NCBI GenBank assembly: GCA_965285935.1
Contig: OZ260663.1
Coordinates: forward strand, 69,192,001-69,256,000
Direction of reading: 5' to 3'
Source: Ophelia neglecta
Lineage: Eukaryota
Length of the DNA: 64,000 nt
The first letter of the stretch is position 1. Every line of letters begins with the position of its first letter. The notes under the pieces are model-generated. The model saw only the letters and a program-made list of their open reading frames with translations, searched no databases and was not told the origin of the DNA. Position numbers and translations under genes: made by a program. Shown in pieces: positions 16,801 through 58,380 of this stretch.

Positions 16801-19800
16801 ACCTCATGAACGTCAGACACACATTCATGCAAAGGCATATCGTGTTCCAGTTCCTTTTGGCTTAGTTCATCAGTAACTTCCGTTTTTTCTTCTTCCACTA
16901 CTTCAATGTTTTCAATAGCTGGCTTTTCATCCTGGAAAACTTCCAATTCTATTTTCTTATCTTCTGTTTCTTTGGAAAGCGAAGTCAATATTTCCTCGGT
17001 GCTGTTGGGCGAGGACTCACTTGGCCCTTGGATCACTGGAACAATACTTTCTTTAATTTCAATAGTATTTTTAACATCTTCTGAATCCATAGTTGTAGGC
17101 TCGTCTATATCATCATCAGTCATAAAAGGTATACCATCATCCACGTCAAAATGTAATTCTGGATGGACTAAAACGTTGCCAGAGACAGATTTTTCTAGCT
17201 CAGGTTCTTTTTCGGCAAGAACATCTGATATTTCTTCTTGCACCGCTTCAACGTTGTCAAATATTGTCTTTGCTTCCTGCAAGTCCTCAGATTCTATTGC
17301 TTCATTTCCAATCGTTTTTGGTACTATGGTCACTTTTTCTGTTTCACTCTCTTCATTTCCTACATGTGTTGAATCTTCAAGTTTTGGCTCTTCTACATCA
17401 TCATCAGTCATAAATGGTATCCCATCATTTACTTCAGGAAGTACACTAGGGGTGGTAGTGATTGATTCTACCACACGATCTTGTGTACTGGTCTCATTTT
17501 CAATAAAGTCAGGGACATTTTGAAGCTCAGTTATACCTATTCCTTGCTTTGAATGTATTTCCCCAGGAGCAGACTGATCTGTAACGGAGCTAACTTTGTC
17601 GGTATCTTGATTTGAAGTATCATAGTCTGTTTTTGGGTCTACTGATTCAGTATGGTCCTGGACTTGAAAATTTACTTCAATGTTTTCTGCATGCATTTCA
17701 CATTTCTCAGATTCATCAGAAGACAAAGTATCTTGTAGATCCTCATCTGTCATAAAAGGAATACCATCATCCACATCAAGAAGTACCTCATGAGCGTCAG
17801 ACACACATTCAGGCAAAGGCACATCTTGTTCTGATTCCTTCTGGTTTAGTTCATCAGTAACTTCTGTTCTTTCTTCTTCCACTACTTCAATGTTTTCAAG
17901 TGCTGGCTTTTCATCCTGGATAATTTCCAATTCTATTTTCTCATCTTCGGTTTCTTTAGATAGTGAAGTCAATATTTCGTTGGTGCTAATTGACAAAGAC
18001 TCACTTTGACCTTGGATCACTGGAACAATACTTTCTTTAATTTCAATAGCATTTTTAACATTTTCTGAATCCATAGTTGTAGGCTCGTCTATATCATCAT
18101 CAGTCATAAAAGGTATACCATCATCCACGTCAAGAAGTACCTCATAAGCGTCAGACACACATTCAGGCAAAGGCACATCTTGTTCTGATTCCTTCTGGTT
18201 TAGTTCATCAGTAACTTCTGTTCTTTCTTCTTCCAATACTTCAATGTTTTCCAGTGCTGGCTTTTCATCCTGGATAACTTCCAATTCTATTTTCTCACCT
18301 TCCATTTCTTTAGATAGTGAAGTCAAAGTTTCCTTGATGCTTATCGGCGAGGACTCACTTTGACCTTGGATCACTGGAACAATATTTTCTTTAATTTCAA
18401 TAGTATTTTTAACATCTTCTGAATCCATAGTTGAAGGCTCGTCTATATCATCATCAGTCATAAAAGGTATACCATCATCCACATCAAAATGTAATTCTGG
18501 ATGTACACAAACGTTGCCAGAGACAGATTTTTCTTGCTCCGGTTCTTTTTCGGCAAGAACATCTGATCTTTCTTCTTGCACCGCTTCAAGATTGTCAAAT
18601 ATTGTCTTTTCTTCCAGCGAGTCTTCAGGTTCTACTGCTTCATTTCTAATCGTTTTTGGTACTGTAGTCACTTTTTCTGTTTCACTCTCTTCATTTTCTA
18701 CATGTGTTGACTCTTCAAGTGTTGGCTCTTCTACATCATCATCAGTCATAAATGGTATCCCATCATTTACTTCAGGAAGTACACTAGGGGTGGTGGTGAC
18801 TGATACTACCACAGTATCTTGCGTTCTGGTCTCATTTTCAATACTGAAGTCAGGTATATTTTGAAGCTCAGTTATATCGATTTCTTGCTTTGAAGGTATT
18901 TCTTCAGGAGCAGACTGATCTGCAACGGAGGTAACTTTGTTGGTATCTTGATTAGGAGTATCACAGTCTGTTTTTGTGTCTACTGATTCAGTATGGTCCT
19001 GGACTTGAAAATCTACTTCATTGTTTTCTGCATGCATTTCACATTTCACAGATTCATCAGAAGACAAAGTATCTTGTAGATCCTCATCTGTCATAAAAGG
19101 AATACCATCATCCACATCAAGAAGTACCTCATGAGCGTCAGACACACATTCAGGCAAAGGCACATCTTGTTCTGATTCCTTCTGGTTTAGTTCATCAGTA
19201 ACTTCTGTTCTTCCTTTTTCCACTACTTCAATGTTTTCCAGGGCTGGCTTTTCATCCTGGATAACTTCCAATTCTATTTTCTCATCTTCCGTTTCTTTAA
19301 ATAGTGAAGTCAAAGTTTCCTCGATGCTAATTGGCGAGGACTCACTTTGACCTTGGACCAATGGAACAATATTTTCTTTAATTTCAATAGTATCTTCAAC
19401 ATTTTCTGAATCCACAGTTGTAGGCTCGTCTATATCTTCATCAGTCATAAAAGGTATACCATCATCCACGTCAAAATTTATTTCTGGATGTACACAAATG
19501 TTGCCGGAGACAGATTTTTCTTGCACAGGTTCTTTTTCAGCAAGAACTTCTGATCTTTCTTCTTGCACCGCTTCAACATTGTCAAATATTGTCTTTTCTT
19601 CCGGCACGTCTTCAGGTTCTATTGCTACATTTCCAATCGTTTTTGATACTGTAGTAACTTTTTCAGTTTCACTCACTTCATTTTCTACATGTGTTGAATC
19701 TTCGGGTGTAGGCTCTTCTATATCATCATCAGTCATAAATGGTATCCCATCATCTACTTCAGGAAGTACACTAGGGGTGGTGGTGATTGATTCTACAACA

Positions 19801-22800
19801 GTATTTTCTTGACTGGTCTCTTTTTCAATATTGACATCAGGGATATTTTGAAGCTCAGGTACACAGACTTCTTCTTTATTTGAAGATATTTCCTCAAGAG
19901 AAGACTGATGTGCAACCGTGCTTACTTCATCTGGCTCTTGACTTGAAGTATCGTAGTCTGTTTTTGGTTGTGGTATTTCAGTTTGATCATTGGCTTGATC
20001 AACTATTTCGTTGCCGGTTTCTGCTAACATGTCACATTTTGCAACAGCATCTGTGGACAAAGTACTTTGTAGATTATCATCTGTCATAAAAGGTATAATA
20101 CCATCATCCACATCAAGAATTGTTTGTTGAACTGCTGTTTCCGTTGGATATTGGACTTCAGGACCTATTTCTTTGCTGTGATCTTCTTCCAGGTCACATT
20201 TAGCAAATTCATCAGTGGACAAATCTTGTTGGTCATCACCAGATATGGTAGTAGATGTCTGCAAAGCAACTGCTTCTGGACTAGACTCCTGTGGCACAAT
20301 GTTATCTGGCACATAACGTTGCTCTGCATCTAATTCTTCTGACTTCGAAGTCACTTCTTCAGAATCAGACTTCACATCAACTGTGATTACTTTGCCTGGA
20401 TCTTGATATAAAATTTCATTGCCAGTTTCTTGGACTGCTGATTTCATCTGGACTTCAGGGACTATGTCTTCACTGATATCAGGAATATCACATTTGTTGA
20501 GCTTATCTGTAGGCACATTAGTTAGAACATCTTGATTTTGGTCATATTTTTTAATAAGAGCCACATCATTATCGACACTTAGGGGTGAAGTGGAAACTGC
20601 TGATGTATTCACTGGAGAAGCATTGTCATTGATTGGTGCACTCTTTACCTCCACATTAAGGTATTTTTGTACCTCAGGGCATAATTCTGTTAAGTCTTCA
20701 TTCTTTGTATCTAATTTTGACAGGTCCTTGGCTTTCCGTCTAGCTTTCTTATTTCGGCGACGCTTTTGTTTACTTGTGAGATTGTCGTCGTTCCCATCCT
20801 CCATACCAATTGCAGACAAGCTTGCTTGTGTTGCAGATGCATTTTGACCACTCTCTTCATGGGCGATGCTATCATGTGCATCACCTTGAACATCTTCTGC
20901 AGGCAACAATTCTTGGTTCAATGGCTCTTGTAAACCAGGCTCCTTTTTCACTGAAGGCTCATCATCATAACTCTGATGTGAAGAAGTAGGCTTGCAAGTT
21001 GTATTTGGAACTGCACATTCCACTTCCTCCTGGACTGCAGGAGCTACACCTTTAGCAATTTTTGTAGCAAAAGTATTTTTGGCGGACTCCTCTATGGTTG
21101 CCTCATTTTCCTGACCATTATCTGTCATAAAATTTATATCATCATCGTCATCCACAACTATTTCATTAGCGGCAGACTCATTCCTAGATAAATCAATTTC
21201 TTGGGTGAGCTGACCAAGGTTTGTTTCAGTTTCTTCTGAAACCTCCATCTTGTCCAAAACAGGCTGCTGTTCAAATATTTCAGGTGTCACCAAAACACCG
21301 TCAGTTTTAACACTAGGTTTAGATTCATTCTGGCTTTGGATTAATGGTTCTTCTTGCATTTCATCCTCAGTAGCTTCTATTTTCTGTTCACTTGGCAATG
21401 TAGGTATAGGACAAGATGCTAACCAAGCAGGAAAATTGTGTATTATAAGGGTTGGAGTGACAGGACATATTAATTCTTCTTGGATTCTTTCACAAGAAGG
21501 CTCATTTCTCGTATCCACTAATGTTTCTGTTGTTGCAGGACATTTGTCTTCTGGAGGCAGTTCATTGAAGCACTGCTGCAGCATTTCACTTTCTGACACA
21601 TTATTTAGTGCCTGTGAATCATTTTGGCATGTTTCTATATTCTGTGCTGTGGCATTGTCTTCTTCATTGATGCATGCCACTAACAGTGCTGATTGGGTTT
21701 GTTTTGATACTGATGCAGAAATTAACTCGTTTTTTTCTGTGACAACTCCTTCAGGATGGTTGTTTTCAACAGGTGTATCAAATGGTTGTGATGTCTCTTT
21801 TTGCATTTGAAAATTAGCCTCTAAGTCATTATTTGACTGGTATGCATTAGAATGAAGAATTGCATTTGTTCTATCTGTTACTGGATTGATTGATTCGTCA
21901 GCCTTTTTACCTATTTCACTTAATGCCCCTCCATAGAGCAGGTGTAGGCCCACAGCATATGTTACACAAGAGGGTACTCCTTCCATCATTGCTGCCTCTA
22001 ATGTGCTGAGAAGTGGTTCACTTTCTATTACGTCATGATCCGACGTATGTGATGTATGTGATAACTCGGTAACTTCAATGGGAACTGATTCTTCACTCAA
22101 ACATTTCTTCTTAAGCTCAAAGGATGTGGATGCTTCTTGACTAATATCTGTTTTTTCTGTGATACATGTATGCTGACCATTAATGGTCACAGGGATGGTA
22201 CTAAGGGCAAAAACTCCTGGCGCATGCTGCACAGCCTTTGGAACATCTTCCATCAGATATTTTTCTGTTGTTTCTTGAGCGCTTTCTTCAGAGCAGGTCT
22301 CAGGAATTTCAGCCGCAACCAAGTCCTCTTGATTAGATACGCAGATTTGGGAACTTGGATTTTCATCGCTTCTATGTGGCTCTCTATGATCTACAGGACC
22401 CCTTTCTTGTATGATGTCTGATTTGAGATTTCCTTTCTCCAAGCAGGTTTCTTGAGTATCTGAAAGTTGATACTGATCTTTATCCTTGACTTTCATCACA
22501 GGGGTTAATTCTCCACATGCACCTTTAGCATTAGCTTCTGACTGATCATAGAAGCCATTCATTCCCACAGGTACATCTTCAAGTACCAGCATTCCTGTTG
22601 AATGAATGACAGATGGAGGAATATCTAACTTGTAACTAGGTTCATCCACGATTTGTATGTTCGGTGTATCCAGCTCAACAACAGCTACAGATGAGTCTCT
22701 TATGCAAGGAGACATAACTGTTGCATCATCTGCTTCTTCTGCCATGGGTTCAGACCTTGTAATGTCAGTCTTCAAGTGTTCATCAATTTGACTTGTTGAG

Positions 22801-24356
22801 AATGTTACAGGAGTATTTGCCATAATCAAGAGGGCAGGGGCATGGCTTACACTTTGGGGTATATCCTGCAACATATGATAGCAGGTTTGTGTTTCCTGAT
22901 TTTCCTTGCCAGACAAACCCAACTCATTTGTACAAGCAGGGTTTGCCAGAATCTCCGGCATGGGAGATGAAGGGAACTGACTTGATTCTTCCTTCATTGC
23001 ATCTTGGGGTGTTTCATTGTCATACTGAGTAATTACTTCTGGCACATTCTCTTCTGTTTCAACTGGAAAAATGTCATGGCAACTTGTGTCCTGGAAAACT
23101 TCAAGCTGGTGCTCAACTGAAGTGGTTTCCATTTCGCTAGTTGGCTCAGGGAAAATGTCCGTTTTGGCATCGGTTAATGTATCATCCATTTCTGCTGGTT
23201 CACTAGGTAATTGCTGTCCCAAACCAGGACTTAATGCATCCACAACCTCACACTCCCAAGAAATATCCTCCTCTACTTCTTTTTCATTAACTGGTTTAAG
23301 GTCAGCTGCTACTTTTGGTGAAAGGATTTCCACTTCAGTATTGCATTGAGTGGGCTCTACTCCAAACTGCTTAACTTGATCAGGATTTGGTTCTCCAAAG
23401 CTTAATTCTGTCTGAGTATCATTTATATTCTCATCATCATCTGCAGGTAAACATTCTGAACTTTTTGGGCTATCTTCTGCACTATCTTCTTTGGATATTG
23501 GTACAGCTTCTTCTGATAAAACATGGGTGGGATTTTCTATTTCACGGTCAATGGTCAAATTTTTATCTTCCTGGGCTAGTTGTTCCTCCTCTGTGTTTCT
23601 GTCTTTGTCCATTGCTGTAACTGTCTCCATGGCAAGGGCAGCAATGGGAGCTAGGAGGGATATACAGGCCATGTCAACCATTTCTTCTTCCATTTCCATC
23701 TGTTTCTTTTCATTTTCAATTCTTAATTTATCCTCAGCTATGAGATCGTCAGCATCTACTATATCATTGCAAAAGAACTCTTCCAGCTCTTCAGCTTCCG
23801 GTACCTTGGAGGGCACAGACACATTCTGAATTGCTTCTAGGTGACGGCTTTGTTCTTCTGCACTACAATAACCGATGTCTAGGCTGTCTGGTGTTTTTAC
23901 ATCATCAGCAGTTACTGGAACTTCTGCGCTTTGTTTATTTACAGCAGGGTGTTCTTCCAAAACTGCAGACAGTGGAATATCATCATGCAAGGGTAACTCT
24001 CTGGGGGGACTTTGATGACAAGATTGTATTGGAGAAGTGTCATTATCACTATCAAGAAATCCGTCAAATACTGGACCTTCAGCATCAAAAGAACCTAAAC
24101 AATTTTCTGTACCTTCATCAGGCTTGTGGTGCTTATCCATACTTAAATCATTGCCTAAACTAAAAGCCGTTGTCCAATCAGGACTTATCTTAACTTCTTC
24201 AACCTCTGACGACTTACAGGGTGACTTTCTTTTACTTGGAGTAAAAGGGCTTCTTCCATGCCATGGTGTATTATCTAGTTCATCATCAGCATCCCATCTA
24301 GCCAGGGCACTGGTATTCCCACTCCCAAGGTATGTCTGGCACTGGGACTTAAATGG
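4806..24356 (-). CDS. Giant 19,551-nt coding exon (6,516 aa; acidic, low-complexity, repeat-rich); probable alternative last exon of TDRKH
   Basis: Stop-free frame of 6,522 codons. The ORF-track 'start' (TTG 24374) lies within a polypyrimidine tract and acceptor (tcatttgttttcctctctccag|CCATTT, phase 0), which matches a phase-0 donor CAG|GTACAA at 26145 in the last core TDRKH exon. All internal repeat spacings are multiples of 3. Coding status is high confidence; linkage to TDRKH is inferred. Confidence 0.85.
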   Translation of the reverse strand, partial: PFKSQCQTYLGSGNTSALARWDADDELDNTPWHGRSPFTPSKRKSPCKSSEVEEVKISPDWTTAFSLGNDLSMDKHHKPDEGTENCLGSFDAEGPVFDGFLDSDNDTSPIQSCHQSPPRELPLHDDIPLSAVLEEHPAVNKQSAEVPVTADDVKTPDSLDIGYCSAEEQSRHLEAIQNVSVPSKVPEAEELEEFFCNDIVDADDLIAEDKLRIENEKKQMEMEEEMVDMACISLLAPIAALAMETVTAMDKDRNTEEEQLAQEDKNLTIDREIENPTHVLSEEAVPISKEDSAEDSPKSSECLPADDDENINDTQTELSFGEPNPDQVKQFGVEPTQCNTEVEILSPKVAADLKPVNEKEVEEDISWECEVVDALSPGLGQQLPSEPAEMDDTLTDAKTDIFPEPTSEMETTSVEHQLEVFQDTSCHDIFPVETEENVPEVITQYDNETPQDAMKEESSQFPSSPMPEILANPACTNELGLSGKENQETQTCYHMLQDIPQSVSHAPALLIMANTPVTFSTSQIDEHLKTDITRSEPMAEEADDATVMSPCIRDSSVAVVELDTPNIQIVDEPSYKLDIPPSVIHSTGMLVLEDVPVGMNGFYDQSEANAKGACGELTPVMKVKDKDQYQLSDTQETCLEKGNLKSDIIQERGPVDHREPHRSDENPSSQICVSNQEDLVAAEIPETCSEESAQETTEKYLMEDVPKAVQHAPGVFALSTIPVTINGQHTCITEKTDISQEASTSFELKKKCLSEESVPIEVTELSHTSHTSDHDVIESEPLLSTLEAAMMEGVPSCVTYAVGLHLLYGGALSEIGKKADESINPVTDRTNAILHSNAYQSNNDLEANFQMQKETSQPFDTPVENNHPEGVVTEKNELISASVSKQTQSALLVACINEEDNATAQNIETCQNDSQALNNVSESEMLQQCFNELPPEDKCPATTETLVDTRNEPSCERIQEELICPVTPTLIIHNFPAWLASCPIPTLPSEQKIEATEDEMQEEPLIQSQNESKPSVKTDGVLVTPEIFEQQPVLDKMEVSEETETNLGQLTQEIDLSRNESAANEIVVDDDDDINFMTDNGQENEATIEESAKNTFATKIAKGVAPAVQEEVECAVPNTTCKPTSSHQSYDDEPSVKKEPGLQEPLNQELLPAEDVQGDAHDSIAHEESGQNASATQASLSAIGMEDGNDDNLTSKQKRRRNKKARRKAKDLSKLDTKNEDLTELCPEVQKYLNVEVKSAPINDNASPVNTSAVSTSPLSVDNDVALIKKYDQNQDVLTNVPTDKLNKCDIPDISEDIVPEVQMKSAVQETGNEILYQDPGKVITVDVKSDSEEVTSKSEELDAEQRYVPDNIVPQESSPEAVALQTSTTISGDDQQDLSTDEFAKCDLEEDHSKEIGPEVQYPTETAVQQTILDVDDGIIPFMTDDNLQSTLSTDAVAKCDMLAETGNEIVDQANDQTEIPQPKTDYDTSSQEPDEVSTVAHQSSLEEISSNKEEVCVPELQNIPDVNIEKETSQENTVVESITTTPSVLPEVDDGIPFMTDDDIEEPTPEDSTHVENEVSETEKVTTVSKTIGNVAIEPEDVPEEKTIFDNVEAVQEERSEVLAEKEPVQEKSVSGNICVHPEINFDVDDGIPFMTDEDIDEPTTVDSENVEDTIEIKENIVPLVQGQSESSPISIEETLTSLFKETEDEKIELEVIQDEKPALENIEVVEKGRTEVTDELNQKESEQDVPLPECVSDAHEVLLDVDDGIPFMTDEDLQDTLSSDESVKCEMHAENNEVDFQVQDHTESVDTKTDCDTPNQDTNKVTSVADQSAPEEIPSKQEIDITELQNIPDFSIENETRTQDTVVVSVTTTPSVLPEVNDGIPFMTDDDVEEPTLEESTHVENEESETEKVTTVPKTIRNEAVEPEDSLEEKTIFDNLEAVQEERSDVLAEKEPEQEKSVSGNVCVHPELHFDVDDGIPFMTDDDIDEPSTMDSEDVKNTIEIKENIVPVIQGQSESSPISIKETLTSLSKEMEGEKIELEVIQDEKPALENIEVLEEERTEVTDELNQKESEQDVPLPECVSDAYEVLLDVDDGIPFMTDDDIDEPTTMDSENVKNAIEIKESIVPVIQGQSESLSISTNEILTSLSKETEDEKIELEIIQDEKPALENIEVVEEERTEVTDELNQKESEQDVPLPECVSDAHEVLLDVDDGIPFMTDEDLQDTLSSDESEKCEMHAENIEVNFQVQDHTESVDPKTDYDTSNQDTDKVSSVTDQSAPGEIHSKQGIGITELQNVPDFIENETSTQDRVVESITTTPSVLPEVNDGIPFMTDDDVEEPKLEDSTHVGNEESETEKVTIVPKTIGNEAIESEDLQEAKTIFDNVEAVQEEISDVLAEKEPELEKSVSGNVLVHPELHFDVDDGIPFMTDDDIDEPTTMDSEDVKNTIEIKESIVPVIQGPSESSPNSTEEILTSLSKETEDKKIELEVFQDEKPAIENIEVVEEEKTEVTDELSQKELEHDMPLHECVSDVHEVLLDVDDGIPFMTDDDIDEPTNMDSEDVKNTIEIKESIVPVIQGPSESSPNSTEEILTSLSKETEDKKIELEVFQDEKPALENIEVVEEEKTEVTDELSQKELEHDMPLHECVSDAHEILLDVDDGIPFMTDDDIEEPTTMDSENVEDTIEIKENIVPLIQGQSEFSPLSTEETLTSLSINTEDEKVELEVIQDEKPALENIEVVEEERAELTDELNQKESEQDVPLPECVSDAHEAFLDVDDGIPFMTDEDLQETLSNDESVKCGMQAESNEVDFQVQDHTESVDPKTDYDTSNQDTDKVSSITDQSAPGEIHSKQGIGITELQNIPDFSIENKTSQQDTVVESITTTPSVLPEVDDGIPYMTDDDVEQPTLVDSTHLENEGSETKKVTTLPKSIGNEAIESEDSPEEKTIFDNVEAVQEERSEVLAEKEPEKEKSVSGNVCVHPELNLDVEDGIPFMTDDDKDEPTTMDSENVEDTIEIKENIVPLMQCQSESSPISIEETLTSLSKETEDEKIELEVIQDEKPALENIEIEEEEKTEVTDELNQKESEQDVPLPECVSDAHEVLLDVDDGIPFMTDEDLQDTLSSDESVKCKAENNEVDFQVQDHTESVDPKTYCDTSNQDTNKITSAADQSAPEETHSKQEIGITELQNIPDFIIENETSTLNTVIESTTNNPIVLPEVDDGIPFMTDDDIEEPTLEDSTHLENEGRETEPPNTSGNVAIKSEDMHEEKAVFDNVETVKKERSEDSGKKEPDQDTPSSGSVSAPLDLHFEIDDGIPFMTDDDIDEPTTMDSEHVESASGINAIVVPVIHSQSEPSAISIEETSTSIPKIAEDTPLEAEIIHDEKPAYDNIEVVEEERIEVPQEIKQKESEQDMPLSESVSAAPEVLLDVDGIPVMTDEDLQDTLSNSEFVKCDMQVESSEEIVSEVPPQTESAVHCTDYKTSCQDPDKVNTFADESSQEEMCSQQKEIVQLPENVEDESEINENIIPEIHSQIESSPISMEGTPTTPNETIKDVEIVTDDLPNEKPQFDQVVTVDEEKTEIPGEIKMEKPDQDKIVSGNVSAVPELLHDGDSGKPYMTWEDNLPTDDPVYDIEAENIKHIMPNVQGKYVSAIEEADNQTSYQPKLEEMPAKSEGLVPDENKDLPEVFQEDDLTLVDVGDGKPLVTDTVLKENISSDEPVQVDIKALAIEDIVTTLQDNSELAVPDSTDCPHPVLATERDSSINEFDIEKLEEQEDPRPKTSAVQAQSPITDTQDANDSSLTSKQKRRRNKKARKKEMERSHPHNNSESGTEMSFEIQAEDSQGTPFVPKEDQIISQEEEQDNIEIEVETPLVCKEAVNTVPDANDQKPSDTCDLLVTREDGDTETELSSKQKRRRNKKSRKRGKDGELTESDTVEDKDIDDSGRKKTKLVDGDTALDENNKTDILPEQENTSSEIRNESSPGIILPSECLHESLPGKTSHIATLQKKTDEEEEAPVGYEKDVMEPTEQVPYGNGETGDSDFVTQTYSQELTASQSVAADPVIHACIDFRQDGTPEPHEHVPATSKEELDVVESVTLKESAIDDGRMGLELEIEVPNENNINEEFTLHPTPDIPSVIPKEEVDIALLTEHDLNGKDQNGQDTFKEVICQSEQMSQEKQQFSPSMATYAEIVAKDQSKEEVEVSEMCYEEMQDNKNIELLPTQQKVQLPVMLEVNDLKGVCPIPEVAKPQEEGRVESELQEKSKISTLPEPENTTPSENKIEEEVMQPMSGILLTDVLPATGEDTLPLLEKKVELVEQSQPQQTTVDGNLDNKMVDSCDEDEEMDDYPHRDDSSECRSSVERGTQTPGDGLGKLRRRRRKRLRKRAAILALKAAAREKGEKPNLLIHGSQRKKQKPKEHRLSSGTEKAKQLPVKLAQSTPEKELKESHLTSKDIANKDREEIRSNGEKKRVDKATCTPDRELFDRRNTAADSKKNKVILPTESKSVHPTTVLNNEQDKPDSIVVHQKPSVTKANKVAVPTEKQSSIKDLAPKVTYTKAEEEVSGCDKDQESASMSSSITSTTDTTSDSPITRKESETDGHITSKQKRRRNKKARKREKEGDQSESDFSKPEQKTKTTHDTITISDYHSASDTSMKDTDSAFDPELKETFHIIHEESHPVCDSGSNDAKNNQDNQVVRDASQCTEMPKVLESDGIKGQMGATNVIITEENKQNSQAEAAPTTEVHKKKKKHTRKKKAPNIASNEASTTEATQHFLELGNEPQQENISNVKDLTEGEPNMLESYSDPSTSPKTHPSGDVCIAMPVCNMPENKAENLSAEETSEGKLRRRRNRRMRKRALGKESSDGKSKPTDSIPVSGAEQPSEGRQDNDLQAEMCHEPCKSDELTADPKLKNDQQYFLGLGHEPKPPDKSKGEAASDSDQEEKHALKEQQVDPDSEMISYQAVVKSAPDILEVPGLQEESSEAYKPDSQNEESADGKLKMAPTPREDETCTKGQIENGVNSEGITEEDGVLEEEILTRERADHERIEDISDDMMHHDLKEQGISGHAIGTSNNSEKLEDTDFSCPVANVENDSKTEVPNYPVIVTPDTQTFPELIDKEARVVEDRQLIPTAPEDECHLDTPEENKDLDSTSQNAELQATKLDNVNAEISTGTIFPVRRSPSVDWTEVNRHYIGDLPSVLYHLTGLRILTSLETGTILHLPIIAEEPEVDNEKKLVELKSIDNQIDQVCSYPDVQIETDKAAIIHASQDHLPPQPIAIAVAESVLDDFEDSESDNINSGLHTSESLVTSVDSSDLEALATYSAVTLLSPLKKNAAALSPGLESEQTWPEEFIHQSIKEDEVLSPKSRSSLEEDVLAWALSRPSSGEKPIPTIAVTPSGSLEANSFDQCPDSQFICEKRIIDIEYLIETENVEIVECFKDNVEQPGTLGEPENHERNAGLSDKVEVKQSLAKAEETEKPEKPIEESQPVLSKSAKEVIAEELLGCEHSQNIPDQRLCPSIGISNIPNTNTESDIEVLSEADSLENLPLDSSDCIGDTQAVPSGDQTLFCLTSDSSDPIFALSTNVTACSTHEITQSLTESEPNEILMSTDSLTAEADLMLQSGHSDFETIEMSDVELAGATEGGCPVSSDEADTGSLAIIPSIVTTFTDLEPPKLQGNNGNPASGDHNHPTHRNTESPSNASGDKPPKDPEDITHSDTNQHGQIALDIPEIDHLASDSFDSTDQEVLGLFQDGQKPESDVGWTPSEELTEDVEGVATREKRSMSADSLGEEYLEGSLDVQTSQTTSQPFVIGRKRKGSETFVSDDSLEEAKGGILAKEDTPVEKVSRPIAMSRRRRKLNESSFSEDSLDDGSKEVETIFRRIDSFDHAQEVEGSVEMQDQQKLVETMELVEPTSTSHFQQSGIEFLLASYKPTNTDEIEYEQMPITERPAVGAVEEDQPPISVARNICSADSEDASIPMVVITTDKSPLPPEVVEMVISGARPPKDIIEPYLKRFEQEEQRKQQKMFEKHFTQQQHVEKESAFSVVTPGSAKKLHGKTSVVGSCPDPVFDINKTEDQVVPGRMSSAEDLNNSENEFPDPVEYADCNKQIFTETKYDLGLTSCAFQQIQTEEVLAVHKVHQPDEDNEEVGLQSEDSNDSAEICPFTADKVMNDYSDPNHPEESQCVKDETEWFEEFRETKVECKQKGIYMAPKQSVTPVFDPTVCNAWAFPKENKATADWPCNFPDITVDMEENLNAEVASDRPDDSYARVVSPELHCVKNENLTEIYYGREEKDSQIGNITEESETRVIQYEEPGQLQKAEIFDQTNLLSSDSSTMDGKSQRKRDLLEYSSEDDMDITLARDQIFQMATGVSPLCNKKYAKEKEEHFLSDDNLGPEMTNKESDKIKVAGSKRKIVGRAAEKKMMEEEKNKLPAEGNTLVSGDDRNPSSRQANASASNDKDNPPLPPKPKSKGRAKKGLLKKPGSKQSEKSVTFEDGDSATSSDASDIYYVDKVDDNDTDTDDDGEYKIKPQFAEKATKL
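14100..20115 (-). repeat. Coding higher-order tandem repeat (units A 339-351 nt, B 276-288 nt, C 351-354 nt), each anchored on DDGIPFMTD(D/E)D
   Basis: Motif anchor (gtcata on + strand) at 20083, 19732, 19444, 19090, 18745, 18457, 18103, 17749, 17407, 17119, 16765, 16411, 16057, 15712, 15424, 15070, 14731, 14455, 14104. Confidence 0.95.
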
Positions 24357-25277
24357 CTGGAGAGAGGAAAACAAATGACAAGGTTTAAGTATTTGACTGT
24401 GATACTGAAAAATGGATGGTACTGAGACAATGAAGCAACATCACACCCAACTTAACATGCATGTATCCATGTGTGCACTGACATGAAAAGCTGCTAAGGT
24501 GAGAGGCTCATCCAAAACCATACCACAGAATACGAATAAAGTGTACAGCCATGCTCTCCCAAATTACGCATATATCACTTATGCTACATGTTACAGATGA
24601 ACTAAAGAAGATGAAAACAGTAATACCAAAAGCCTGAAAGTGATGAATCAATATCAGATATTACACCAAATTAATTCACACTGAATGAAACCTGTTTGGT
24701 GTTTTCATCAGCATTAATTTTATGAAATAAATGACCAGTTTTGAGGTTACTTCTCGATAACATTCCTGCTGATACAAGCCATCAAGTTCAATAAATGCAG
24801 CGATGCAGGCTAATTGTTAGATTGGAGTAATGATTTAAATCTCTTAAATCTTATTACCTCCTTAGTATAAAAAAGCAACCCTGTATAGCTGAGAAATACC
24901 CTACTTTAACATTTGGATGAAACATTATATTAACAGAACTGTCCTAGATAACTGTGTATAATAGAGATACGATTCTGCTAGGGGCTATTCAATTGGAGAG
25001 GTGGCAGGAACAGAATTGAATCTGTTTTGACCCACACCCCTGGTGACAATGATTTGCCACACCTATATTTATATATATATGCATTCCTGGTGCCCCAATA
25101 TTCAGACTCTGTTGTAAAAAACGTCACAAGGTATGGTACGAGGACCTTGACAGTGGACCTTGTGTTGCAATCATCTGTTGATGTTTAAATGTTATGAATA
25201 ATTCACAAATTAGTGACACCAGGAATCATGTCAAGTGCAGGGTACTCTCTCCACAACTTAATGTTACTATATTGCAT

Positions 25278-25283
25278 TTTATT
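25278..25283 (-). terminator. Candidate polyadenylation signal (AATAAA) of the short TDRKH isoform
   Basis: tttatt on + strand, about 250 nt downstream of the TAG at 25533-25535. The hexamer is common in AT-rich DNA. Confidence 0.4.
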
Positions 25284-25532
25284 TCAATACAACTGGAGAT
25301 TATGTTTTAAATCTGATGCATGGTTATTAATGTCACACAAATATCCTTAACAGTGGACTTGAAGCATATTAAACAATTTCCATATTTCATTCAATGTGAA
25401 TTGAATCAAACCAAAGGAGAGTAGTTAAATGAGAAAGGTTTGGTTAATTGGAAGCTCCAACGTAACAAAATCATATTTTAAAAAGCTTTACCGGCTCCAT
25501 GCTGTATGGAAGCAAACAGGGACGACACGGAT

Positions 25533-28500
25533 CTATTTGCATGTGGCGGCTAAATGGTGAAGAAAAAACTAATTTCATTCATAAAACAATTGTCAAAAGT
25601 AGAGCACAAGTTAGGAATGTCTGGTAGGCAGAAGGACACTTTCCTTCTTCTTACACTTTATTATTATTCAGAGCTTTGGCATTTGGCAGCAGAAAGCAAA
25701 TACATAAAGTTAAACAATTTTATGAAATGATTTTCCCACCTCGGGATCCATAGTAAGATTTTCCAATGTTCTTTGGTCATATCTAAATTTATAAAATGAA
25801 AATTTTTTGGTTGGGAGTTTTAAGGGTAAAACATATACAATGATACAGATAAGTTTAGCACTATTGACACAGCGTGTACAAAAGAAGACATAATAACATT
25901 GCAGCATTTATTTATTTATTAGTTCATGCCTACAAAGCAATCTGCACATGCAAAACGCCTGGTGCAGCAGTTGATATAAATGTGATGAACAGGAGCGTAA
26001 GCAGCTACAAACAGTACAGACACAAAGCTGGAGAAGATCTTGTCCTGCTGCCTACAAGACATTTCTAACTGCCCTGTATCTCTTCTAGGAAATGGATAAT
26101 TTCAAACTCATGCACTCACGTTCAAGACTATTAAGGCCTTGTACCTGATCATCTAAGTTAAAACTCGTATCTTCTTTGTCCAATACTGCACCACCCTGGC
26201 TGACTAGCTCTTCTGCAACATTCTTGTCCTAGTTTGTGAAGGAAATATGTATTGAATCAGTGCAGGAAAAAGATGCATCATATTTGAACTTATATCTATG
26301 AAATCCTTGATAAAGATGTCAGTGTATGCAGTATGCCATTAAACAAGCTAAATCAGGCTAATAGTTTTACTAAGAAACAAAACTTTGGGATGAGAAAACT
26401 AAAAAGTTTCTTAGTTCAATAATTTCTTTGTTAAAACTATTCATTTTGAAAGATTTGGGGGGTGGGGGTGGCCCGGGGGGGGGGGGGGGGATGGGGGGAG
26501 GTCGAAGGGTGTATTCTCCAATACCCACACTTTTGGTGAAAACAGTTAGGGGCCTATGGAAATAAAATATTTTGGGGGGCCTTGGACATGTTTGCCAGTA
26601 TATGGATTAAATGACTTTTTGACTGTGTCAATAACAAATAGGTGAAGGTTTCCCATCTTAAAACTCATTGGAGGTGTTAAATATTTGACACAAATTTGGT
26701 GACCATAGGTCAAAGCATTGCAATGTGATTGTAAGTACAAAGCTTATTGGCCAGACAGTTAGAAGGCTGGCATTTCTCAGTCATCTGTGTCCCATGCAAT
26801 GGGGGACACAAACATATGGACATACCTCTTCTTGGTTTGTATCAATTAGTTCAATACATGGTAAGGTTCCATTTGGCGTGTCTTTATATGTTATAATTTT
26901 TGCCATCAAACTCTTCCATTTGGCACAATATGTCAGATCTTCAAACACGTCAATGTCTTCATCTCTCCATTCTTCTCCTACAATGGCAAAGTCAAGAGTA
27001 CAATATGAAATAAGAGTAAGCTAAGTCCCTTTAATTTTTACTTTTACTTTACATGTCAAGTATTGATATCCACTCCATCTTGTCAACTCACCTACTGGCT
27101 TGACATTGGCCAGTGAGCATCTTAAAGCTTGGAATGGAAGGCTGAAGAAATCAGATCTGAAAACAATCAATTAACATGTACTTATACATAAAGAATTGTG
27201 GTTTACTTCCTAAGGCTTCCAAATGTGTTCTGGCATAAAACAAGTGAACAAAGTATTGAACCTTAACTGATAATTCTTGAAAATTGAGTTATTCCATATA
27301 AAGAGACATGTAAATGATGATATGCAATTTCTTGTTTATAAAAATCTTATGAAATAGGTTGTAAAGTAAATTGTAGTCCCTCCACATATATTTAAAGGAG
27401 AAGACCTAATTATTCTCTGATTAAATACTACCATTTTCATAGGAAAAATCAGTCATTAGTCATTGCTTATTTAAAGTACACTGTTGCCATTTTCACCAAT
27501 TTGAAAATTTCCAACGCTACGTGCTTGCACACTGATAAAAAATATATTTACAAACAGTGAAACTGTATTTCATAGTAAGAACAGACTCTTTACAACTTTT
27601 TCTATGTACACAATTATTGTTTTATGTTCAAAATCAACCATAGATATAATATATGGGAATTATTTGGCCTTAATAATTTGAACTTAAACTGATGATCACT
27701 TTAACAGATTACAATCATACCTCTATACATAAACAAAAATGATACCTTCTATAGGTATTTATTAAAGCAGCCCTATTAACAATGACAATTAATTTGACAG
27801 TTTACAGCTGGACGAACCTTAATTGTCTAGTTTTGTCTTTGGTTATGAAGCCACTATCACCGTAGTCCACATAATATAAGTCAAGCTGGTCATCAAGCAC
27901 CTCACATACACGAGCCCTGTACCATGACGTGTCATGTTCAAAGGGGGCTGCTATTATGTCTCCAACTTTAGGATTCTCAACCTGGCTGGCCTGTAAACAT
28001 TAAATGAACCTGATTGGAATATGCTATACAGTTTTAAATTTTAAAGCATGACATCATAAAAACAGCATTTGAACACTGGCACTGAGATGGCCACAATAAT
28101 TTTAGTATCTCTGATTCTGCTTACCATGGAGCAATCCCATAAAGTGACTAAACATGCATTAAATTCTCTAAAATTTGTTCGATGGCCGTAGAAGTAGTTT
28201 TATTGCCGCTGCTCCTAAACTGACCTGCTGCATCTCTTCACCTAAGTAGTATTTAGTCATTTGGTCGACGAGCTCATCCAGCTGTGCAGACCTGGCACTG
28301 AGTACTTGTACCCAGAAATGGCCAGGGTGCTCCACCGCTGACACCCACACCTCCAGATAGTCCTTGCGGTTTGGCCAGCTTGTCTCTTGTACACGGACAT
28401 CCCCCGCCTCGCTGGGGGCACCAACAAGTGACGCTGACTCGACTATCTTCTCTTCAATATCTGATACAAATCATTATACAAACAATGAGTGGTTTATTTT

Positions 28501-31071
28501 CCAATTGGTTCATATATGATTATAAATTTGATTAAAGACTATACTTCAAAAATAGTATTAAGCCTAAAAAGTATTTAGGAATGTGCAGTGTTAATAATAT
28601 ATTAATAAATCTAATTGAATGTAAGATCAGCAAAATTGCTTATATCAAGTTAAAAATCATAATAGGAGCAATAAAGCTGGTGAAGATATAATCTAGAGAC
28701 CTGAAATTTACACACAAAATTTTGTTTACACACAGTATAGAAAATATTTAGCTGTCTTAGTTTAATCACTCACCATTTGGGGCCTCTAAGGCTGTGTCTT
28801 GAGATTGGTCTGGAGGTGTGGGTTCTGAGGAGTCATCGTCCTTTTTGCGTCTGCCACGCTGTTGCCGGTTTGCAGCCAAAACCTCCATCTTGGCTTGGTG
28901 AGCTTCTTCATCTCGTACCTTCTCTTCTAACATTCCCTTAAGTAATAGCCAAATAAACTAATAAGGGAAGGGTGTAAATTTAATTCAATTTTTGTTCATA
29001 TATTCCTGACAATGCACCATAACAAGTTGATAGGGACATTTATTTAAATGAATCATCTTTCACAAATCTTCAATTATGTGCAATTATCTTAAAACTCCAG
29101 AAATGTAAATACTCTAAAAATAAATGATGTATGGGTGGCTGGTGAAGCCTCTAAGATACTAGTAGTATACATGGTGGGTTGAATCACTATGATGATCATT
29201 AGTCTCTTGCCTGATGATTGTGTTAAACATAATGTTATTTCTGCAATCTAATCACATAGGTCTTACTTACCTTGGCATTTTCAATGGCTTCGGGGGTGCC
29301 TCTCAGGACAATTTCTTTAGTGTCATTAGGACCTGTGTCCTCGGAGCGATCAATCATGATTCTGCATTTCGAAGCCCTCTGCAGATGTCGAATGGTTTCA
29401 CCTGCTCGACCTAAAAATTAACATCATTGCAATTATCAGGCTTACCCCGGGGGACCACTTCATTTTGGTAAGGTGCTCCCAAAGCAAATCTTTCATTTTG
29501 ACCATCTGAGACCTATCTCAATGCCAAAAATACCCTGAGATGCCACTTCCATAACTTGGAACACTGAATTGTTCATTATATGAAATTAAGTTAAAAACAA
29601 AGTTCTTAATGCCTCTGCTTTCGTTGAAGCGAGCTATCCGACCATTTGACCCAGCAGGAGAAGACAGCAAAATGGTAGTAACCCATGGAAAAGCCTAGTT
29701 GCTGCTTTTTACTGATACAGATGTGGAGCAGTGACTTTCATGATGCTAAAGTATTAGGGAGGGGAAAAGATTTATAACAATAATAATCAATTACTTTTTT
29801 AATTTTTTCCCCTTAATTATGTTTTTTTTAACATGTGCATTTTAGGTTCATTCTTTGGCACAGTTAAGACAAATTTCCACATACCAATAATTCTGCCAAG
29901 GGCTTTCTGCGGTACGAGAACTGTCTCTGAGACAAGGGGAGGTTGGTCTGCAATCACTTTACGCACCATCATCTCTGCCTGCTGGGCTCCCTGCTGGGAG
30001 CCTCTGATGACTAGAACGCGGTGTCCTTCTTTGCCTCCTTCATCTTTGAAATCAAGTCTAGCACCAGTTGTTTCTCTGATCTAAAATGTTAATAATAAGC
30101 TTAAAAACTTAATAATCAGGCCCTAATGCTTCCATAACTTAACGCTGTCTTACTTTGCATACAACATGCAAGGGCTTTTCCAAGTAAAAACATAAGGGGG
30201 GAGGGAGGAGAAAATACCTTTTTTTACCACCTCAACAAATTCATTTTTTATTTGTACCCTTTAATAAAGTGCTTCTGAAGCAACGACACCCCCCCCCCCC
30301 CCTCCTTCAGTAATCCCAGCTTAAATATCTTTTTAATAAAAGTCCCACCCTCATTACTGTTATTTAAATAAGTGCATGAGAATTACCTGTTTTTGAATGC
30401 AAGAAAAAAATCACCCACATCATTTTCTTGAAAATAAAATTGCCTGTGGATTTCTTCATTAACTTACGGCCTTCACCCAATTATACCAACTTAGAATCAG
30501 GCATGAAACTACAGAAGAAAATAAGTGTTCCACCCCACCATTACCATATAATATAGAATAGCCCCAATGTAATTTTATTAAGTGCCTTCCTACCTCTTTG
30601 ATCATAGCACCTTGATGACCGATGACAGCCCCAACGGCATCTCTAGGCACTCGAACATCGATCACAGTCTGTCGCGAGGTGACCACCCGGCGATGACCAC
30701 TCTCTTCCTCTTCCTCATCTGAAAATAAATTAGAAATAAACATATTTGCCTGAATATTCAGATCTTCTGCGTTGCATAGATTCTCCATCTAAAAAGTCAA
30801 ATTTGTTATACATTTCATAGGACATAATTAAATGTCGGATCTAAAGCAATGATAATAGTGTATGTATGTTAACAATTTCTCAGAAGTAATAATAACAGAA
30901 CATAGTTTTCAATTCACCATCCTTTTACTGTTTACAGAATGTGCAGTGGCAAGGTCAATAAGATGGTATCAACTTACCTTCACTTTTCTTTAGCAAGAAA
31001 TACAAAAGCAGGGCAGTGACGGGCATAGACACTGCCAGCGCTACTTTTTGGGCGGTTGTCAACTGACGCAT
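25533..31071 (-). CDS. TDRKH: Tudor and KH domain-containing protein (TDRKH/Papi orthologue), short ~489-aa isoform
   Basis: Hand-spliced GT-AG exons with consistent phases: 30978-31071 (MRQLTTAQKVALAVSMPVTALLLYFLLKK, TM anchor), 30594-30718 (KH1 VPRDAVGAVIGHQGAMIKE), 29885-30080, 29271-29410 (KH2 GRAGETIR), 28774-28936, 28225-28460 (VWVSAVEHPGHFWVQ), 27818-27990 (Tudor WYRARV...YYVDYGD), 27092-27156 (SDFFSLPFQALRCSLA), 26826-26977, 26120-26228 and a putative last exon 25533-25549 (..PATCK*). TM-KH-KH-eTudor order is diagnostic of TDRKH. The last exon is less certain than the rest. Confidence 0.93.
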
Positions 31072-57364: not shown

Positions 57365-58380
57365 CATCCCCTGCGGGTTCGGGGAAAGAATAGGCCCGAC
57401 GTACCTCTGCGTGTCGTAAAAGGCGACTAAAAGGGGCGTCCTGTTTGCCGTTGGAATCAACCTGTGTTGGGGGAAAGACGGGATCCTGGTAGTTGAGCTT
57501 ACCTGATCACCGCGGTGTTTAGCGACAACACACCACTTCGACCCTTATTGGCATCTGGAGACTTCCTCATTGAGGTCTCCAGAAAATCCCAACATGACAA
57601 CCTGCTCGGATTAAAGTCTCTGGTAGAGATCCCTGTCAAGGCGACTCCTCACAAGTCAATGAATACTAGTAAAGGAGTCATCCGCTGTCGGGATCTCAAT
57701 GCCTGCACTGAGGAGGAGATTCTGGATGAACTCGAAGACCAGGGATTAACACAGGTCAGGTGCTGCACACGCAAGACACCTGACACTGCTGTGAAAACTG
57801 GTACTTATTTTTCTAACATTTAACTCTCCAAGTCTACCTCCTACATTGAAAGCTGGCTTCTTGAACCTCAAGGTTACACCCTACGTGGTACCAATTGCAA
57901 GGGAGCGCATGCCTCGTCTGATCGTAAGTGTCCCGTCTGGGTACGGGAAAAGGAGATGCAGGCCTATAAAGCAGTCTCCTTTTCTGGAACTCGTAAAATA
58001 ATTGAAACTAGAACACCAGGCGGACCAGCTGGCAAATCTTACGCCGCTGCAGCAACCCCTGTCTTAAAACGAGCTCCTACCCAGAGATCGGCGGAGATTC
58101 AGGTAAACACCGAAGAGTTGAAGTCTCTTGCTCCAATACATCCATCAACGAGCAAGTCGAGCTATCGAGGCAAATACTAACACAAACTTAAGTCAGAATA
58201 ACCCAAACAGAACAAACGATCACTACCAATAATAGACCTCACACAGACAGAGAACGGAAAGGGGAGGACCCTGTCTCCCAATTTAACCGTTTTGGTGCGC
58301 TGTCTGGGGACGAGGAGGAGGAGATTGATCACCAAAGTGATACACCTCCTCCTATGAACCTGGCTACGGGTCAGGCGACC
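57365..58380 (+). mobile_element. 5' part of an I/Nimb/Loa-type non-LTR retrotransposon: structured leader plus disrupted gag-like ORF1
   Basis: LASGDFLIEV...PHKSMNTSKGVIRCRDL...EEEILDEL..QG is characteristic of I-clade ORF1. Zinc-knuckle remnant NCKGAHASSDRKCPVW at about 57893-57940; KSYAAA motif. Stops and deletions present; no ORF2. Confidence 0.82.

What the first reader, a model, noticed from the sequence alone, without database searches (positions are those of the whole stretch)
24356..26228. Two competing 5' splice sites 25 nt apart form a reading-frame switch between short and giant TDRKH
Seen: the last core exon has donor A (CAG|GTACAA, 26145, phase 0) and donor B (AAC|GTGAGT, 26120, phase 1). 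B joined to acceptor 25549 reads ..LE-PATCK-stop with an AATAAA about 250 nt later. B joined to the giant acceptor reads ..LE-PI-stop. Only A joined to 24356 opens the giant frame directly. A + the 58-nt cassette 25492-25549 (open in phase 0: PPHANRSVSSLFASIQHGA) + giant exon also stops after 2 codons. A possible 23-nt microexon (24858-24880, donor GAG|GTAATA) would restore frame for both phase-1 routes. Inference: protein length can be toggled about 14-fold by coupled donor and last-exon choice.
Basis: partly seen in the sequence, partly recalled or inferred. Interest (0 to 1): 0.8.

Follow-up and report, generated by a model that had tools for sequence, protein, structure and literature searches.

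The report
TDRKH gene beside giant coding exon
A normal-looking piRNA-pathway gene (TDRKH) is followed on the same strand by a real 19.5-kb coding exon, but sequence alone cannot show that the two are spliced together, and the proposed two-donor frame switch has no support beyond matching reading frames.

Summary
The gene lies on the minus strand. It is a single-copy TDRKH/Papi orthologue of 10 coding exons (476 aa). A 6,516-codon open exon (24356-4809) follows 1.8 kb downstream.

The giant exon is real coding sequence. One other species encodes a homologue (P0001). Similarity to it starts exactly at acceptor 24356 and ends at the same C-terminus. The first in-frame ATG lies about 70 codons inside the conserved part, so the exon needs an upstream phase-0 donor.

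The switch itself is unsupported.
- No RNA run exists, and the three runs that hold the stretch are genomic contigs without joints.
- Donor A scores below all nine core donors, at the level of a random GT.
- Donor B is good (chance about 0.02).
- The cassette and microexon are no better than 28 other pseudo-exons in the spacer.

- Unspliced read-through gives a 495-aa protein ending at TAG 26087-85, followed by a triple AATAAA.
- B>24421 and A>24404 also open the giant frame.
- In-frame ATGs in the spacer would allow an independent gene.

My best reading (0.4) is a composite terminal exon, where splicing at A competes with proximal polyadenylation. An independent giant gene is nearly as likely (0.33).

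The parts
30978..31071 (-). TDRKH coding exon 1: ATG at 31071 and an N-terminal hydrophobic anchor (MRQLTTAQKVALAVSMPVTALLLYFLLKKSE). Donor AAG|GTAAGT, phase 1.
30594..30718 (-). Exon 2: acidic linker and start of KH1.
   Evidence: Pfam KH_1 on the ORF piece 30462-30788, just under the curated cut-off (21.1 vs 21.5 bits); splice sites
29885..30080 (-). Exon 3: end of KH1 and start of KH2.
   Evidence: KH_1, E 4.4e-9
29271..29410 (-). Exon 4: KH2.
   Evidence: KH_1, E 1e-11
28774..28936 (-). Exon 5: charged linker.
28225..28460 (-). Exon 6: N-terminal part of the extended Tudor domain.
   Evidence: Pfam TUDOR; all PDB hits are TDRKH/Papi, best 6pi7 at 2.2e-12
27818..27990 (-). Exon 7: Tudor core.
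   Evidence: TUDOR, E 6.2e-12
27092..27156 (-). Exon 8: extended Tudor (SDFFSLPFQALRCSLANVKPV).
26826..26977 (-). Exon 9: extended Tudor. Its donor GAG|GTATGT is also phase 0.
   Evidence: Aligns to TDRKH 5j39 residues 139-185 of 208
26145..26228 (-). It is 84 nt long and phase 0 at both ends.
26139..26147 (-). Donor A, CAG|GTACAA, phase 0. It is the weakest donor of the gene.
   Evidence: Score -0.19 against 1.04-7.7 for the nine core donors
26114..26122 (-). Donor B, AAC|GTGAGT, phase 1. The intron side matches the consensus perfectly.
   Evidence: Score 3.95; chance of a GTRAGT within 60 nt about 0.016-0.02
26085..26144 (-). Read-through tail VQGLNSLERECMSLKLSIS plus TAG at 26087-26085. This gives a 495-aa short form with no further splicing.
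25907..25920 (-). Three overlapping AATAAA, 165 nt after the read-through stop, followed by T/GT-rich sequence. Candidate proximal poly(A) site.
25492..25549 (-). 58-nt candidate cassette (acceptor tttag|, donor CCG|GTAAAG). It also holds ATGs at 25542 and 25500 that reach the giant frame through its donor.
25278..25283 (-).
24858..24880 (-). 23-nt candidate microexon. Its acceptor is poor (pyrimidine fraction 0.56) and its donor scores 1.14.
24357..24440 (-). 28 open codons upstream of the giant acceptor, bounded by TGA at 24443-24441. The stretch holds alternative AG acceptors at 24421 (in frame with B) and 24404 (in frame with A). It shows no similarity to P0001.
4809..24356 (-). Giant terminal coding exon of 6,516 codons. 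It is acidic (E 13.7%, D 9.4%), has no Pfam domain and is single-copy. Stop TAA at 4808-4806.
23568..24344 (-). Conserved N block (exon residues 5-263, 51% identical to P0001). It includes TYLGSGN, DNTPWHGRSPF and LDSDNDTSPIQSC, and a long helix at 23553-23753 that AF2 predicts with confidence.
13407..20039 (-). Repeat region with at least 14 D[DG]GIP[FY]MTD units, mostly 118 aa apart. The 354-nt tandem arrays at 16047-17149 and 17739-18487 match at 92-93%.
4842..8882 (-). Conserved C block (residues 5159-6505, 38% identical to P0001). It consists of islands of short invariant motifs. In the 431 residues folded (exon residues 5860-6290) AF2 predicts mostly disorder and one confident helix (6312-6455). 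A KSVTF (RVxF-like) motif lies at 4947-4961.
4631..4641 (-). ATTAAA/AATAAA about 165 nt after the giant-exon stop. Candidate distal poly(A) signal.

Best explanation
The locus is a single-copy TDRKH/Papi orthologue: an N-terminal membrane anchor, two KH domains and an extended Tudor domain in 10 coding exons (476 aa). Its last core exon behaves as a composite terminal exon.

By default the transcript runs on through both GT sites. It reads 19 more codons to TAG 26087-85 and is cleaved after the triple AATAAA at 25920-25907. The product is an ordinary 495-aa TDRKH.

When transcription passes that site, the weak internal 5' splice site A (26145, phase 0) is joined to the strong, conserved acceptor 24356. 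The 6,516-codon terminal exon is then added, giving a 6,992-aa form with a mostly disordered acidic tail.

On this reading the choice is splicing versus proximal polyadenylation, as in the IgM heavy-chain switch. It is not a contest between two donors that shifts the frame. Donor B is either unused or acts as a U1-binding site between A and the poly(A) signal. The cassette and microexon are chance pseudo-exons.

Shown here: the exon model, the frames, the signals, and the reality and boundary of the giant exon. Inferred: every statement about which sites are used.
For: - TDRKH identity: KH_1 matches on three exon pieces (two above Pfam's cut-off, the KH1-start piece just under it) and TUDOR on two. 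Every PDB hit is TDRKH or Papi. The ten exons join into an open 476-aa frame. The gene is single-copy in the 762-Mb genome.
- The giant exon is real. It has 6,544 stop-free codons. P0001 (5,539 aa) matches at 1.4e-216, with conserved N and C blocks.
- The boundary is fixed. Similarity begins exactly at the LQ| of acceptor 24356, with none upstream, and both proteins end within about 10 residues of each other. Acceptor 24356 has the best pyrimidine tract in the region (0.83).
- An upstream phase-0 exon is required. The first in-frame Met of the ORF lies after the conserved TYLGSGN..DNTPWHGRSPF residues.
- A>24356 is in frame.
- A read-through stop and a triple AATAAA lie 165 nt apart, the same spacing as at the giant exon's own end.
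Against: - There is no RNA evidence at all.
- Donor A scores like a random GT. A phase-0 GT somewhere in the last 20 codons is expected by chance, so the frame match carries little weight.
- A strong proximal poly(A) signal together with a very weak donor predicts that the giant form would be rare.
- The contig encoding P0001 could not be fetched, so synteny with TDRKH in the second species is unknown. A search with the Tudor exon did not return an ORF from that contig.
- No annotated protein combining KH/Tudor with this tail was found.
Confidence: 0.4

Rival explanations
1. There are two separate genes in tandem. TDRKH ends at TAG 26087-85 and the triple AATAAA. The giant exon belongs to an independent transcription unit whose short first exon lies in the 1.5 kb between that poly(A) site and 24356. 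One candidate is the 'cassette': ATG 25500 in the context ACAGCATGG, or ATG 25542, with donor 25492 in phase 0. That would give MEP|PFKSQ... or MQIDPCRPCLLPYSMEP|PFKSQ...
For: - cassATG>24356 is open.
- 6 of 12 spacer donors have an in-frame upstream ATG and phase 0, so a first exon is easy to place.
- A strong proximal poly(A) signal follows directly after a natural TDRKH stop.
- Donor A is at random-GT level.
- P0001 carries no KH or Tudor Pfam domain.
- No KH/Tudor-plus-tail protein was found in any length class searched.
- The conserved motif lies at the very N-terminus of the exon.
Against: - The new promoter would lie only about 350 nt or less from the upstream gene's poly(A) site in a 762-Mb genome.
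- The strong acceptor at 25549 would be pointless on a first exon.
- In-frame ATG routes are so common in the spacer that none is evidence.
- P0001 is an ORF-caller product that starts at an intronic ATG, so its lack of KH/Tudor says nothing.
Confidence: 0.33
2. Donors A and B are both used and compete. Combined with the choice among acceptors 25549, 24880 and 24356, they shift the frame and toggle between a short and a giant TDRKH.
For: - All frames are as stated.
- B has a perfect intron-side consensus close to the exon end (P about 0.02) and scores within the range of the core donors.
- Acceptor 25549 has a strong pyrimidine tract (0.78).
- The splice sites are unchanged in the three genomic runs.
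Against: - There are no junction data.
- A is the weakest donor of the gene.
- The cassette and microexon are not distinguishable from 28 pseudo-exons in the same spacer.
- The short form needs none of these sites.
- B>24356 and A>cassette>24356 would give short proteins on mRNAs with a 19.5-kb 3' UTR, which is uneconomical.
Confidence: 0.1
3. The fusion runs through donor B rather than A. B (phase 1) joins the upstream acceptor 24421 (ttgtctcag|TA). That stays in frame and adds 22 non-conserved linker residues before PFKSQ...
For: - B>24421 is open.
- B is the better donor.
- Acceptor 24421 has a pyrimidine fraction of 0.61, within the core range of 0.50-0.72.
- P0001's frame is also open for at least 56 codons upstream of the boundary.
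Against: - Conservation with P0001 stops exactly at 24356, and the residues before it in both species look like a translated pyrimidine tract ending in CAG.
- Acceptor 24356 is clearly stronger.
- Each of the three phases has one AG in the 84-nt leader, so the frame match is uninformative.
Confidence: 0.07
4. Mutually exclusive last exons. Exon 9's phase-0 donor (26826, GAG|GTATGT) skips exon 10 and joins 24356 directly. Exon 10 with its read-through tail serves only the short form.
For: - Exon 9's donor is phase 0 and scores 4.56, far better than A.
- Exon 10 is a symmetric 84-nt exon.
Against: By position against the 5j39/6b57 constructs, exon 10 encodes the end of the extended Tudor domain. 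Skipping it would probably truncate the fold (inference). The competing acceptor 26228 lies much closer.
Confidence: 0.05

Closest known systems
TDRKH / Papi (mitochondria-anchored piRNA 3'-end trimming cofactor; PDB 6pi7, 5j39, 6b57, 5vqg, 5ygb)
   Same: It has an N-terminal hydrophobic anchor, two KH domains and an extended Tudor domain. Every PDB hit of the two Tudor exons searched (6 and 9) is a TDRKH or Papi chain. It is single-copy.
   Different: Known members are about 560-580 aa (own knowledge). Here a 6,516-codon exon follows in a compatible phase. No described member carries such a tail: no paper holds both 'TDRKH' and 'giant exon', and no protein was found in the length classes searched.
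Composite terminal exon / intronic polyadenylation switch (IgM heavy chain secreted versus membrane form; PCPA transcripts, PMC4227790, PMC5928244)
   Same: An internal, weak 5' splice site sits upstream of an in-frame stop and a poly(A) signal, with a distal terminal exon further downstream. The U1-type sequence at B lies between the weak donor and the poly(A) signal.
   Different: Use of either end is not shown here. The distal exon is 19.5 kb and changes protein length 14-fold, rather than swapping a short tail.
Alternative tandem 5' splice sites (for example Bcl-x long/short, WT1 +/-KTS; own knowledge)
   Same: Two GT sites lie 25 nt apart at one exon end, with complementary strengths: A is good on the exon side and B on the intron side.
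   Different: Known cases have both sites documented by transcripts. Here A is at random-GT level and no junction data exist.
Giant-exon isoforms of scaffold proteins (giant ankyrin-G/B exons, titin Novex-3 terminal exon; own knowledge)
   Same: A single very large exon adds thousands of mostly disordered residues to a modular protein by alternative processing.
   Different: Those exons are internal or shorten the protein. Here the exon is terminal, is found in only one other species, and its link to the upstream gene is unproven.

Membership tests
TDRKH/Papi | Two KH (type I) domains | tested here: met
   Pfam KH_1 on exon pieces 30462-30788 (21.1 bits, just under the 21.5 cut-off, because the domain is split by an intron), 29820-30080 (36.4 bits) and 29238-29417 (44.9 bits).
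TDRKH/Papi | Extended Tudor domain closest to TDRKH rather than to other Tudor proteins | tested here: met
   Pfam TUDOR on two exons. All six PDB hits of exon 6 and all six of exon 9 are TDRKH or Papi chains.
TDRKH/Papi | N-terminal transmembrane anchor | tested here: inconclusive
   An 18-residue hydrophobic stretch, VALAVSMPVTALLLYFLL, is followed by KK. No transmembrane predictor was run.
TDRKH/Papi | Binding of methyl-arginine PIWI tails and recruitment of the trimmer | not testable with these tools
   Needs biochemistry.
Composite terminal exon (splice versus poly(A) switch) | Internal 5' splice site upstream of an in-frame stop in the same exon body | tested here: met
   CAG|GT at 26145, TAG at 26087-85.
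Composite terminal exon (splice versus poly(A) switch) | Poly(A) signal in the intron downstream of that stop | tested here: met
   AATAAA three times at 25920-25907, followed by T/GT-rich sequence. This is a signal only; cleavage is not shown.
Composite terminal exon (splice versus poly(A) switch) | Both the spliced and the proximally polyadenylated RNA exist | not testable with these tools
   No RNA runs. The runs laid are genomic contigs.
Alternative tandem 5' splice sites | Both sites have splice-site quality comparable to used donors | tested here: not met
   B scores 3.95, within the core range.
Alternative tandem 5' splice sites | Junction reads from both sites | not testable with these tools
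Giant coding exon (real, not a chance ORF) | Open frame far beyond chance, and conservation in another species with matching ends | tested here: met
   6,544 codons. P0001 matches at 1.4e-216. Boundaries match at both ends.

The most novel reading that the evidence does not exclude
The only TDRKH gene of this animal makes, besides the ordinary 495-aa form, a 6,992-aa form anchored to the mitochondrial outer membrane. Its 6,500-residue acidic tail is repeat-expanded and studded with short conserved motifs, and would act as a scaffold at the piRNA-processing surface. Output would be gated by U1 binding at GTGAGT (donor B), which silences the adjacent triple poly(A) signal so that the weak donor A can splice to the giant exon.
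Probability: 0.12. Interest if true: 0.7.

Novelty: new variant of a known kind. Interest (0 to 1): 0.38.

Why it matters
TDRKH/Papi is a small, well-conserved adaptor that holds PIWI proteins and the pre-piRNA trimmer on mitochondria. If the single TDRKH gene of an animal also produced a form 14 times longer, it would be an unusual case of a core piRNA factor acquiring a lineage-specific scaffold. It would also be a clean natural system for studying how splicing competes with polyadenylation over a 19.5-kb exon. If the giant exon is instead an independent gene, the result is more ordinary: a new, fast-evolving, disordered giant protein of unknown function next to TDRKH, and a warning that frame compatibility alone invites false fusion models.

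Tried and rejected
**RNA evidence**
- The look-up of sequencing runs found no RNA holder.
- Read laying on X1-X3 showed genomic contigs only. The one joint is a 4-nt indel in a (CCN)n tract.

**Relatives of the giant exon**
- The word search with the C block found only P0001.
- The N block against proteins of 1,100-3,500 aa found nothing.
- The full HMMER search with the first 1,200 aa returned 0 hits, not even P0001. A composition filter or the library's make-up may be the cause, so I do not read this as absence.
- The ESM Atlas was blank twice.
- JGI metagenomes were blank for the N-block alignment and for a DNTPWHGRSPF back-translation.

**Context of P0001**
- The look-up of encoding contigs refuses proteins over 5,000 aa.
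- The listing of cluster members gave no accession.
- The Tudor-exon search returned only P0002, on an 886-bp metagenome contig with no 3' context.

**Other checks**
- Pfam on the giant exon gave nothing above cut-off; the EFhand_Ca_insen hit at 21.5 bits is below its cut-off of 27.
- Rfam on the whole window gave nothing.
- The spacer is not a repeat or transposon.
- Exon 10 alone is too short to hit TDRKH in the PDB.
- AF2 of the two conserved blocks gave one long helix each, in otherwise low-confidence chains, from two-sequence alignments. I did not run a fold search on single helices.

**Ideas rejected**
- The cassette and microexon as special features.
- The cassette ATG as evidence for an own start.

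**Method note**
Exons were searched one by one by reference.
- Joined frames were computed only locally, for frame and length checks.

Full report
**Observation.** The gene lies on the minus strand. Reading 26400-24200 and enumerating AG/GT sites confirms every coordinate in the finding:
- donor A, CAG|GTACAA (last exon base 26145, phase 0);
- donor B, AAC|GTGAGT (26120, phase 1);
- acceptor 25549, and the 58-nt cassette ending at 25492 (CCG|GTAAAG);
- the 23-nt microexon 24880-24858 (GAG|GTAATA);
- the giant acceptor 24356 (ctctccag|CC).

B>25549 gives ..LEPATCK*, B>24356 gives ..LEPI*, A>24356 is open, A>cassette>24356 stops after AI, and the microexon restores the frame for both phase-1 routes. 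The AATAAA at 25283 lies 250 nt after the PATCK stop.

**The upstream gene.** Stop-to-stop ORF pieces with consistent splice sites give ten coding exons from ATG 31071 to 26145. They join into an open 476-aa frame (joined only locally, not searched).
- Searched exon by exon, three pieces match KH_1 (two above Pfam's cut-off, the KH1-start piece just under it) and two match TUDOR.
- Every PDB match of exons 6 and 9 is human or mouse TDRKH, Bombyx Papi or Drosophila Papi.
- Exon 1 encodes a hydrophobic N-terminal stretch.
- The Tudor exon occurs once in the 762-Mb genome.

This is the animal's single TDRKH orthologue. By position against the 208-residue 5j39 construct, exon 10 encodes the last part of the extended Tudor domain. 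That placement is an inference, because exon 10 alone is too short to match.

**The giant exon.** A 6,544-codon frame without stops runs from 24440 to 4809. From acceptor 24356 it holds 6,516 codons and ends in TAA at 4808-4806. ATTAAA/AATAAA follow about 165 nt later.
- The product is acidic (E 13.7%, D 9.4%) and has no Pfam domain.
- It carries a recently expanded 354-nt tandem repeat, the D-D-G-I-P-F-M-T-D units.
- It is single-copy.
- It is real coding sequence. One other species encodes P0001 (5,539 aa), which matches at 1.4e-216. The N block is conserved at 51% and the C block at 38%, around a diverged middle.
- Similarity starts exactly at the LQ| of acceptor 24356, with nothing upstream, and the two proteins end within about ten residues of each other.
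- The first in-frame Met of the ORF lies after the conserved TYLGSGN..DNTPWHGRSPF residues.

So 24356 is a true, conserved 3' splice site in phase 0, and the exon is a terminal exon that must be fed by an upstream coding exon. AF2 on two-sequence alignments predicts disorder apart from one long helix in each modelled stretch.

1. Without any further splicing, exon 10 reads on for 19 codons (VQGLNSLERECMSLKLSIS) to TAG 26087-85. 165 nt later come three overlapping AATAAA (25920-25907), followed by T/GT-rich sequence. This is the same stop-to-signal spacing as at the giant exon's own end. It is the simplest source of a short (495-aa) TDRKH, and it needs neither B nor 25549.
2. The 84-nt open leader before 24356 holds AGs at 24421 and 24404. 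B>24421 and A>24404 also run open into the giant frame, so A>24356 is not the only direct route.
3. Exon 9's donor is also phase 0.
4. The cassette holds ATGs at 25542 and 25500 (the latter in ACAGCATGG) that reach the giant frame through donor 25492. An independent gene would therefore fit the frames too.

- The nine core donors score 1.04-7.7. B scores 3.95. A scores -0.19, about rank 13 among all GTs of the spacer.
- GTRAGT occurs at 2.7-3.3 per 10 kb in the window, so one within 60 nt of a given point has P of about 0.016-0.02. B is mildly unusual and A is not.
- At thresholds the cassette passes, the spacer offers 28 pseudo-exons. The microexon's acceptor fails the pyrimidine threshold.
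- With the microexon added, 4 of the 58 donor/pseudo-exon routes stay open into the giant exon.
- 6 of 12 spacer donors have an in-frame upstream ATG with phase 0.

Frame compatibility in this spacer is therefore cheap. It cannot choose between the models.

**Transcript and comparative evidence.** None could be obtained.
- No RNA run holds the stretch.
- The three holders come from one sample and are genomic contigs that cross the introns. They show single-base differences but no change at any of the splice sites and no splice joints.
It has no accession on record.
- A Tudor-exon search returned only an 886-bp metagenome contig from a more distant animal.
- No protein combining KH/Tudor with this tail appeared in the length classes searched.
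- The exhaustive HMMER job returned nothing, not even P0001, so I do not read it as absence.
- JGI metagenomes and the ESM Atlas were blank.
- The spacer 26144-24357 is unique in the genome and is not a transposon.

**Most likely mechanism.** I commit, at 0.4, to a composite terminal exon. The default is read-through plus proximal polyadenylation, giving the ordinary TDRKH. The giant form arises when the weak internal donor A is spliced to 24356. The contest is then between splicing and cleavage, as in the IgM heavy-chain switch (own knowledge) and in composite terminal exons generally (PMC4227790, PMC5928244). B may be a U1-binding site that damps the neighbouring poly(A) signal; U1 suppression of intronic poly(A) sites is described in PMC4227790, but its action here is speculation.

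Nearly as likely (0.33) is that TDRKH simply ends at that poly(A) site and the giant exon belongs to its own transcription unit, with a short first exon in the spacer.

**Verdict.** The sequence description is accurate but incomplete, and the interpretation cannot be judged without RNA. The solid result is a conserved 19.5-kb terminal coding exon that needs a phase-0 donor, lying 1.8 kb downstream of the single TDRKH gene. Whether the two are one gene is the question worth an experiment.

**Rules followed.** Exons were searched singly by reference. 

Noticed in passing
window 49770-49920 (+): A thioredoxin-domain exon (PF00085, E 2.7e-9; motif RCGPC...AVFLKVDVDKCQ). It belongs to a neighbouring gene on the opposite strand, upstream of TDRKH.
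   Followed up: partly
window 13407-20039 (-), arrays 16047-17149 and 17739-18487: A recent tandem expansion inside the giant exon. At least 14 D[DG]GIP[FY]MTD units lie mostly 118 aa apart, and the 354-nt DNA units match at 92-93%.
   Followed up: partly
window 4947-4961 (-) and P0001 C-terminus: K-S-V-T-F-E-D here and K-R-V-R-F-E-D in P0001. This is a conserved RVxF-like motif of the kind that docks protein phosphatase 1. The link to PP1 is a lead from my own knowledge and is untested.
   Followed up: no
giant exon, six sites (for example exon residues about 1195-1210, 3785-3800, 3890-3905, 4355, 4590-4605, 4830-4845): A recurring basic motif of the type (T/S)SKQKRRRNKKARK or GKLRRRR.R.RKR. 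It resembles a nuclear localisation signal and is spread through the acidic tail.
   Followed up: no
window 23553-23753 (-): AF2 predicts one long helix with pLDDT above 90 in the conserved N block. Its core is hydrophobic (MVDMACISLLAPIAALAMETV) and is conserved in P0001.
   Followed up: partly
whole window: CpG observed/expected is 0.22-0.35 in the genes, the spacer and the flanks alike. The region is CpG-depleted throughout.
   Followed up: no
window about 26480-26580 (intron 9): A (CCN)n tract that translates as a proline run. The public contigs break there and show length differences of 4-6 nt.
   Followed up: no
window 26184, 26192, 26193 (exon 10): All three genomic runs differ from the assembly at these bases. 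Two changes are synonymous and one turns Gly into Cys in GGA(V). They are polymorphism, or a difference between the assembled individual and the sequenced one.
   Followed up: partly
window 57497-58563 (+): Three consecutive ORFs of 108-124 aa without a Pfam match, rich in basic residues. They may be the remnant of a mobile element.
   Followed up: partly
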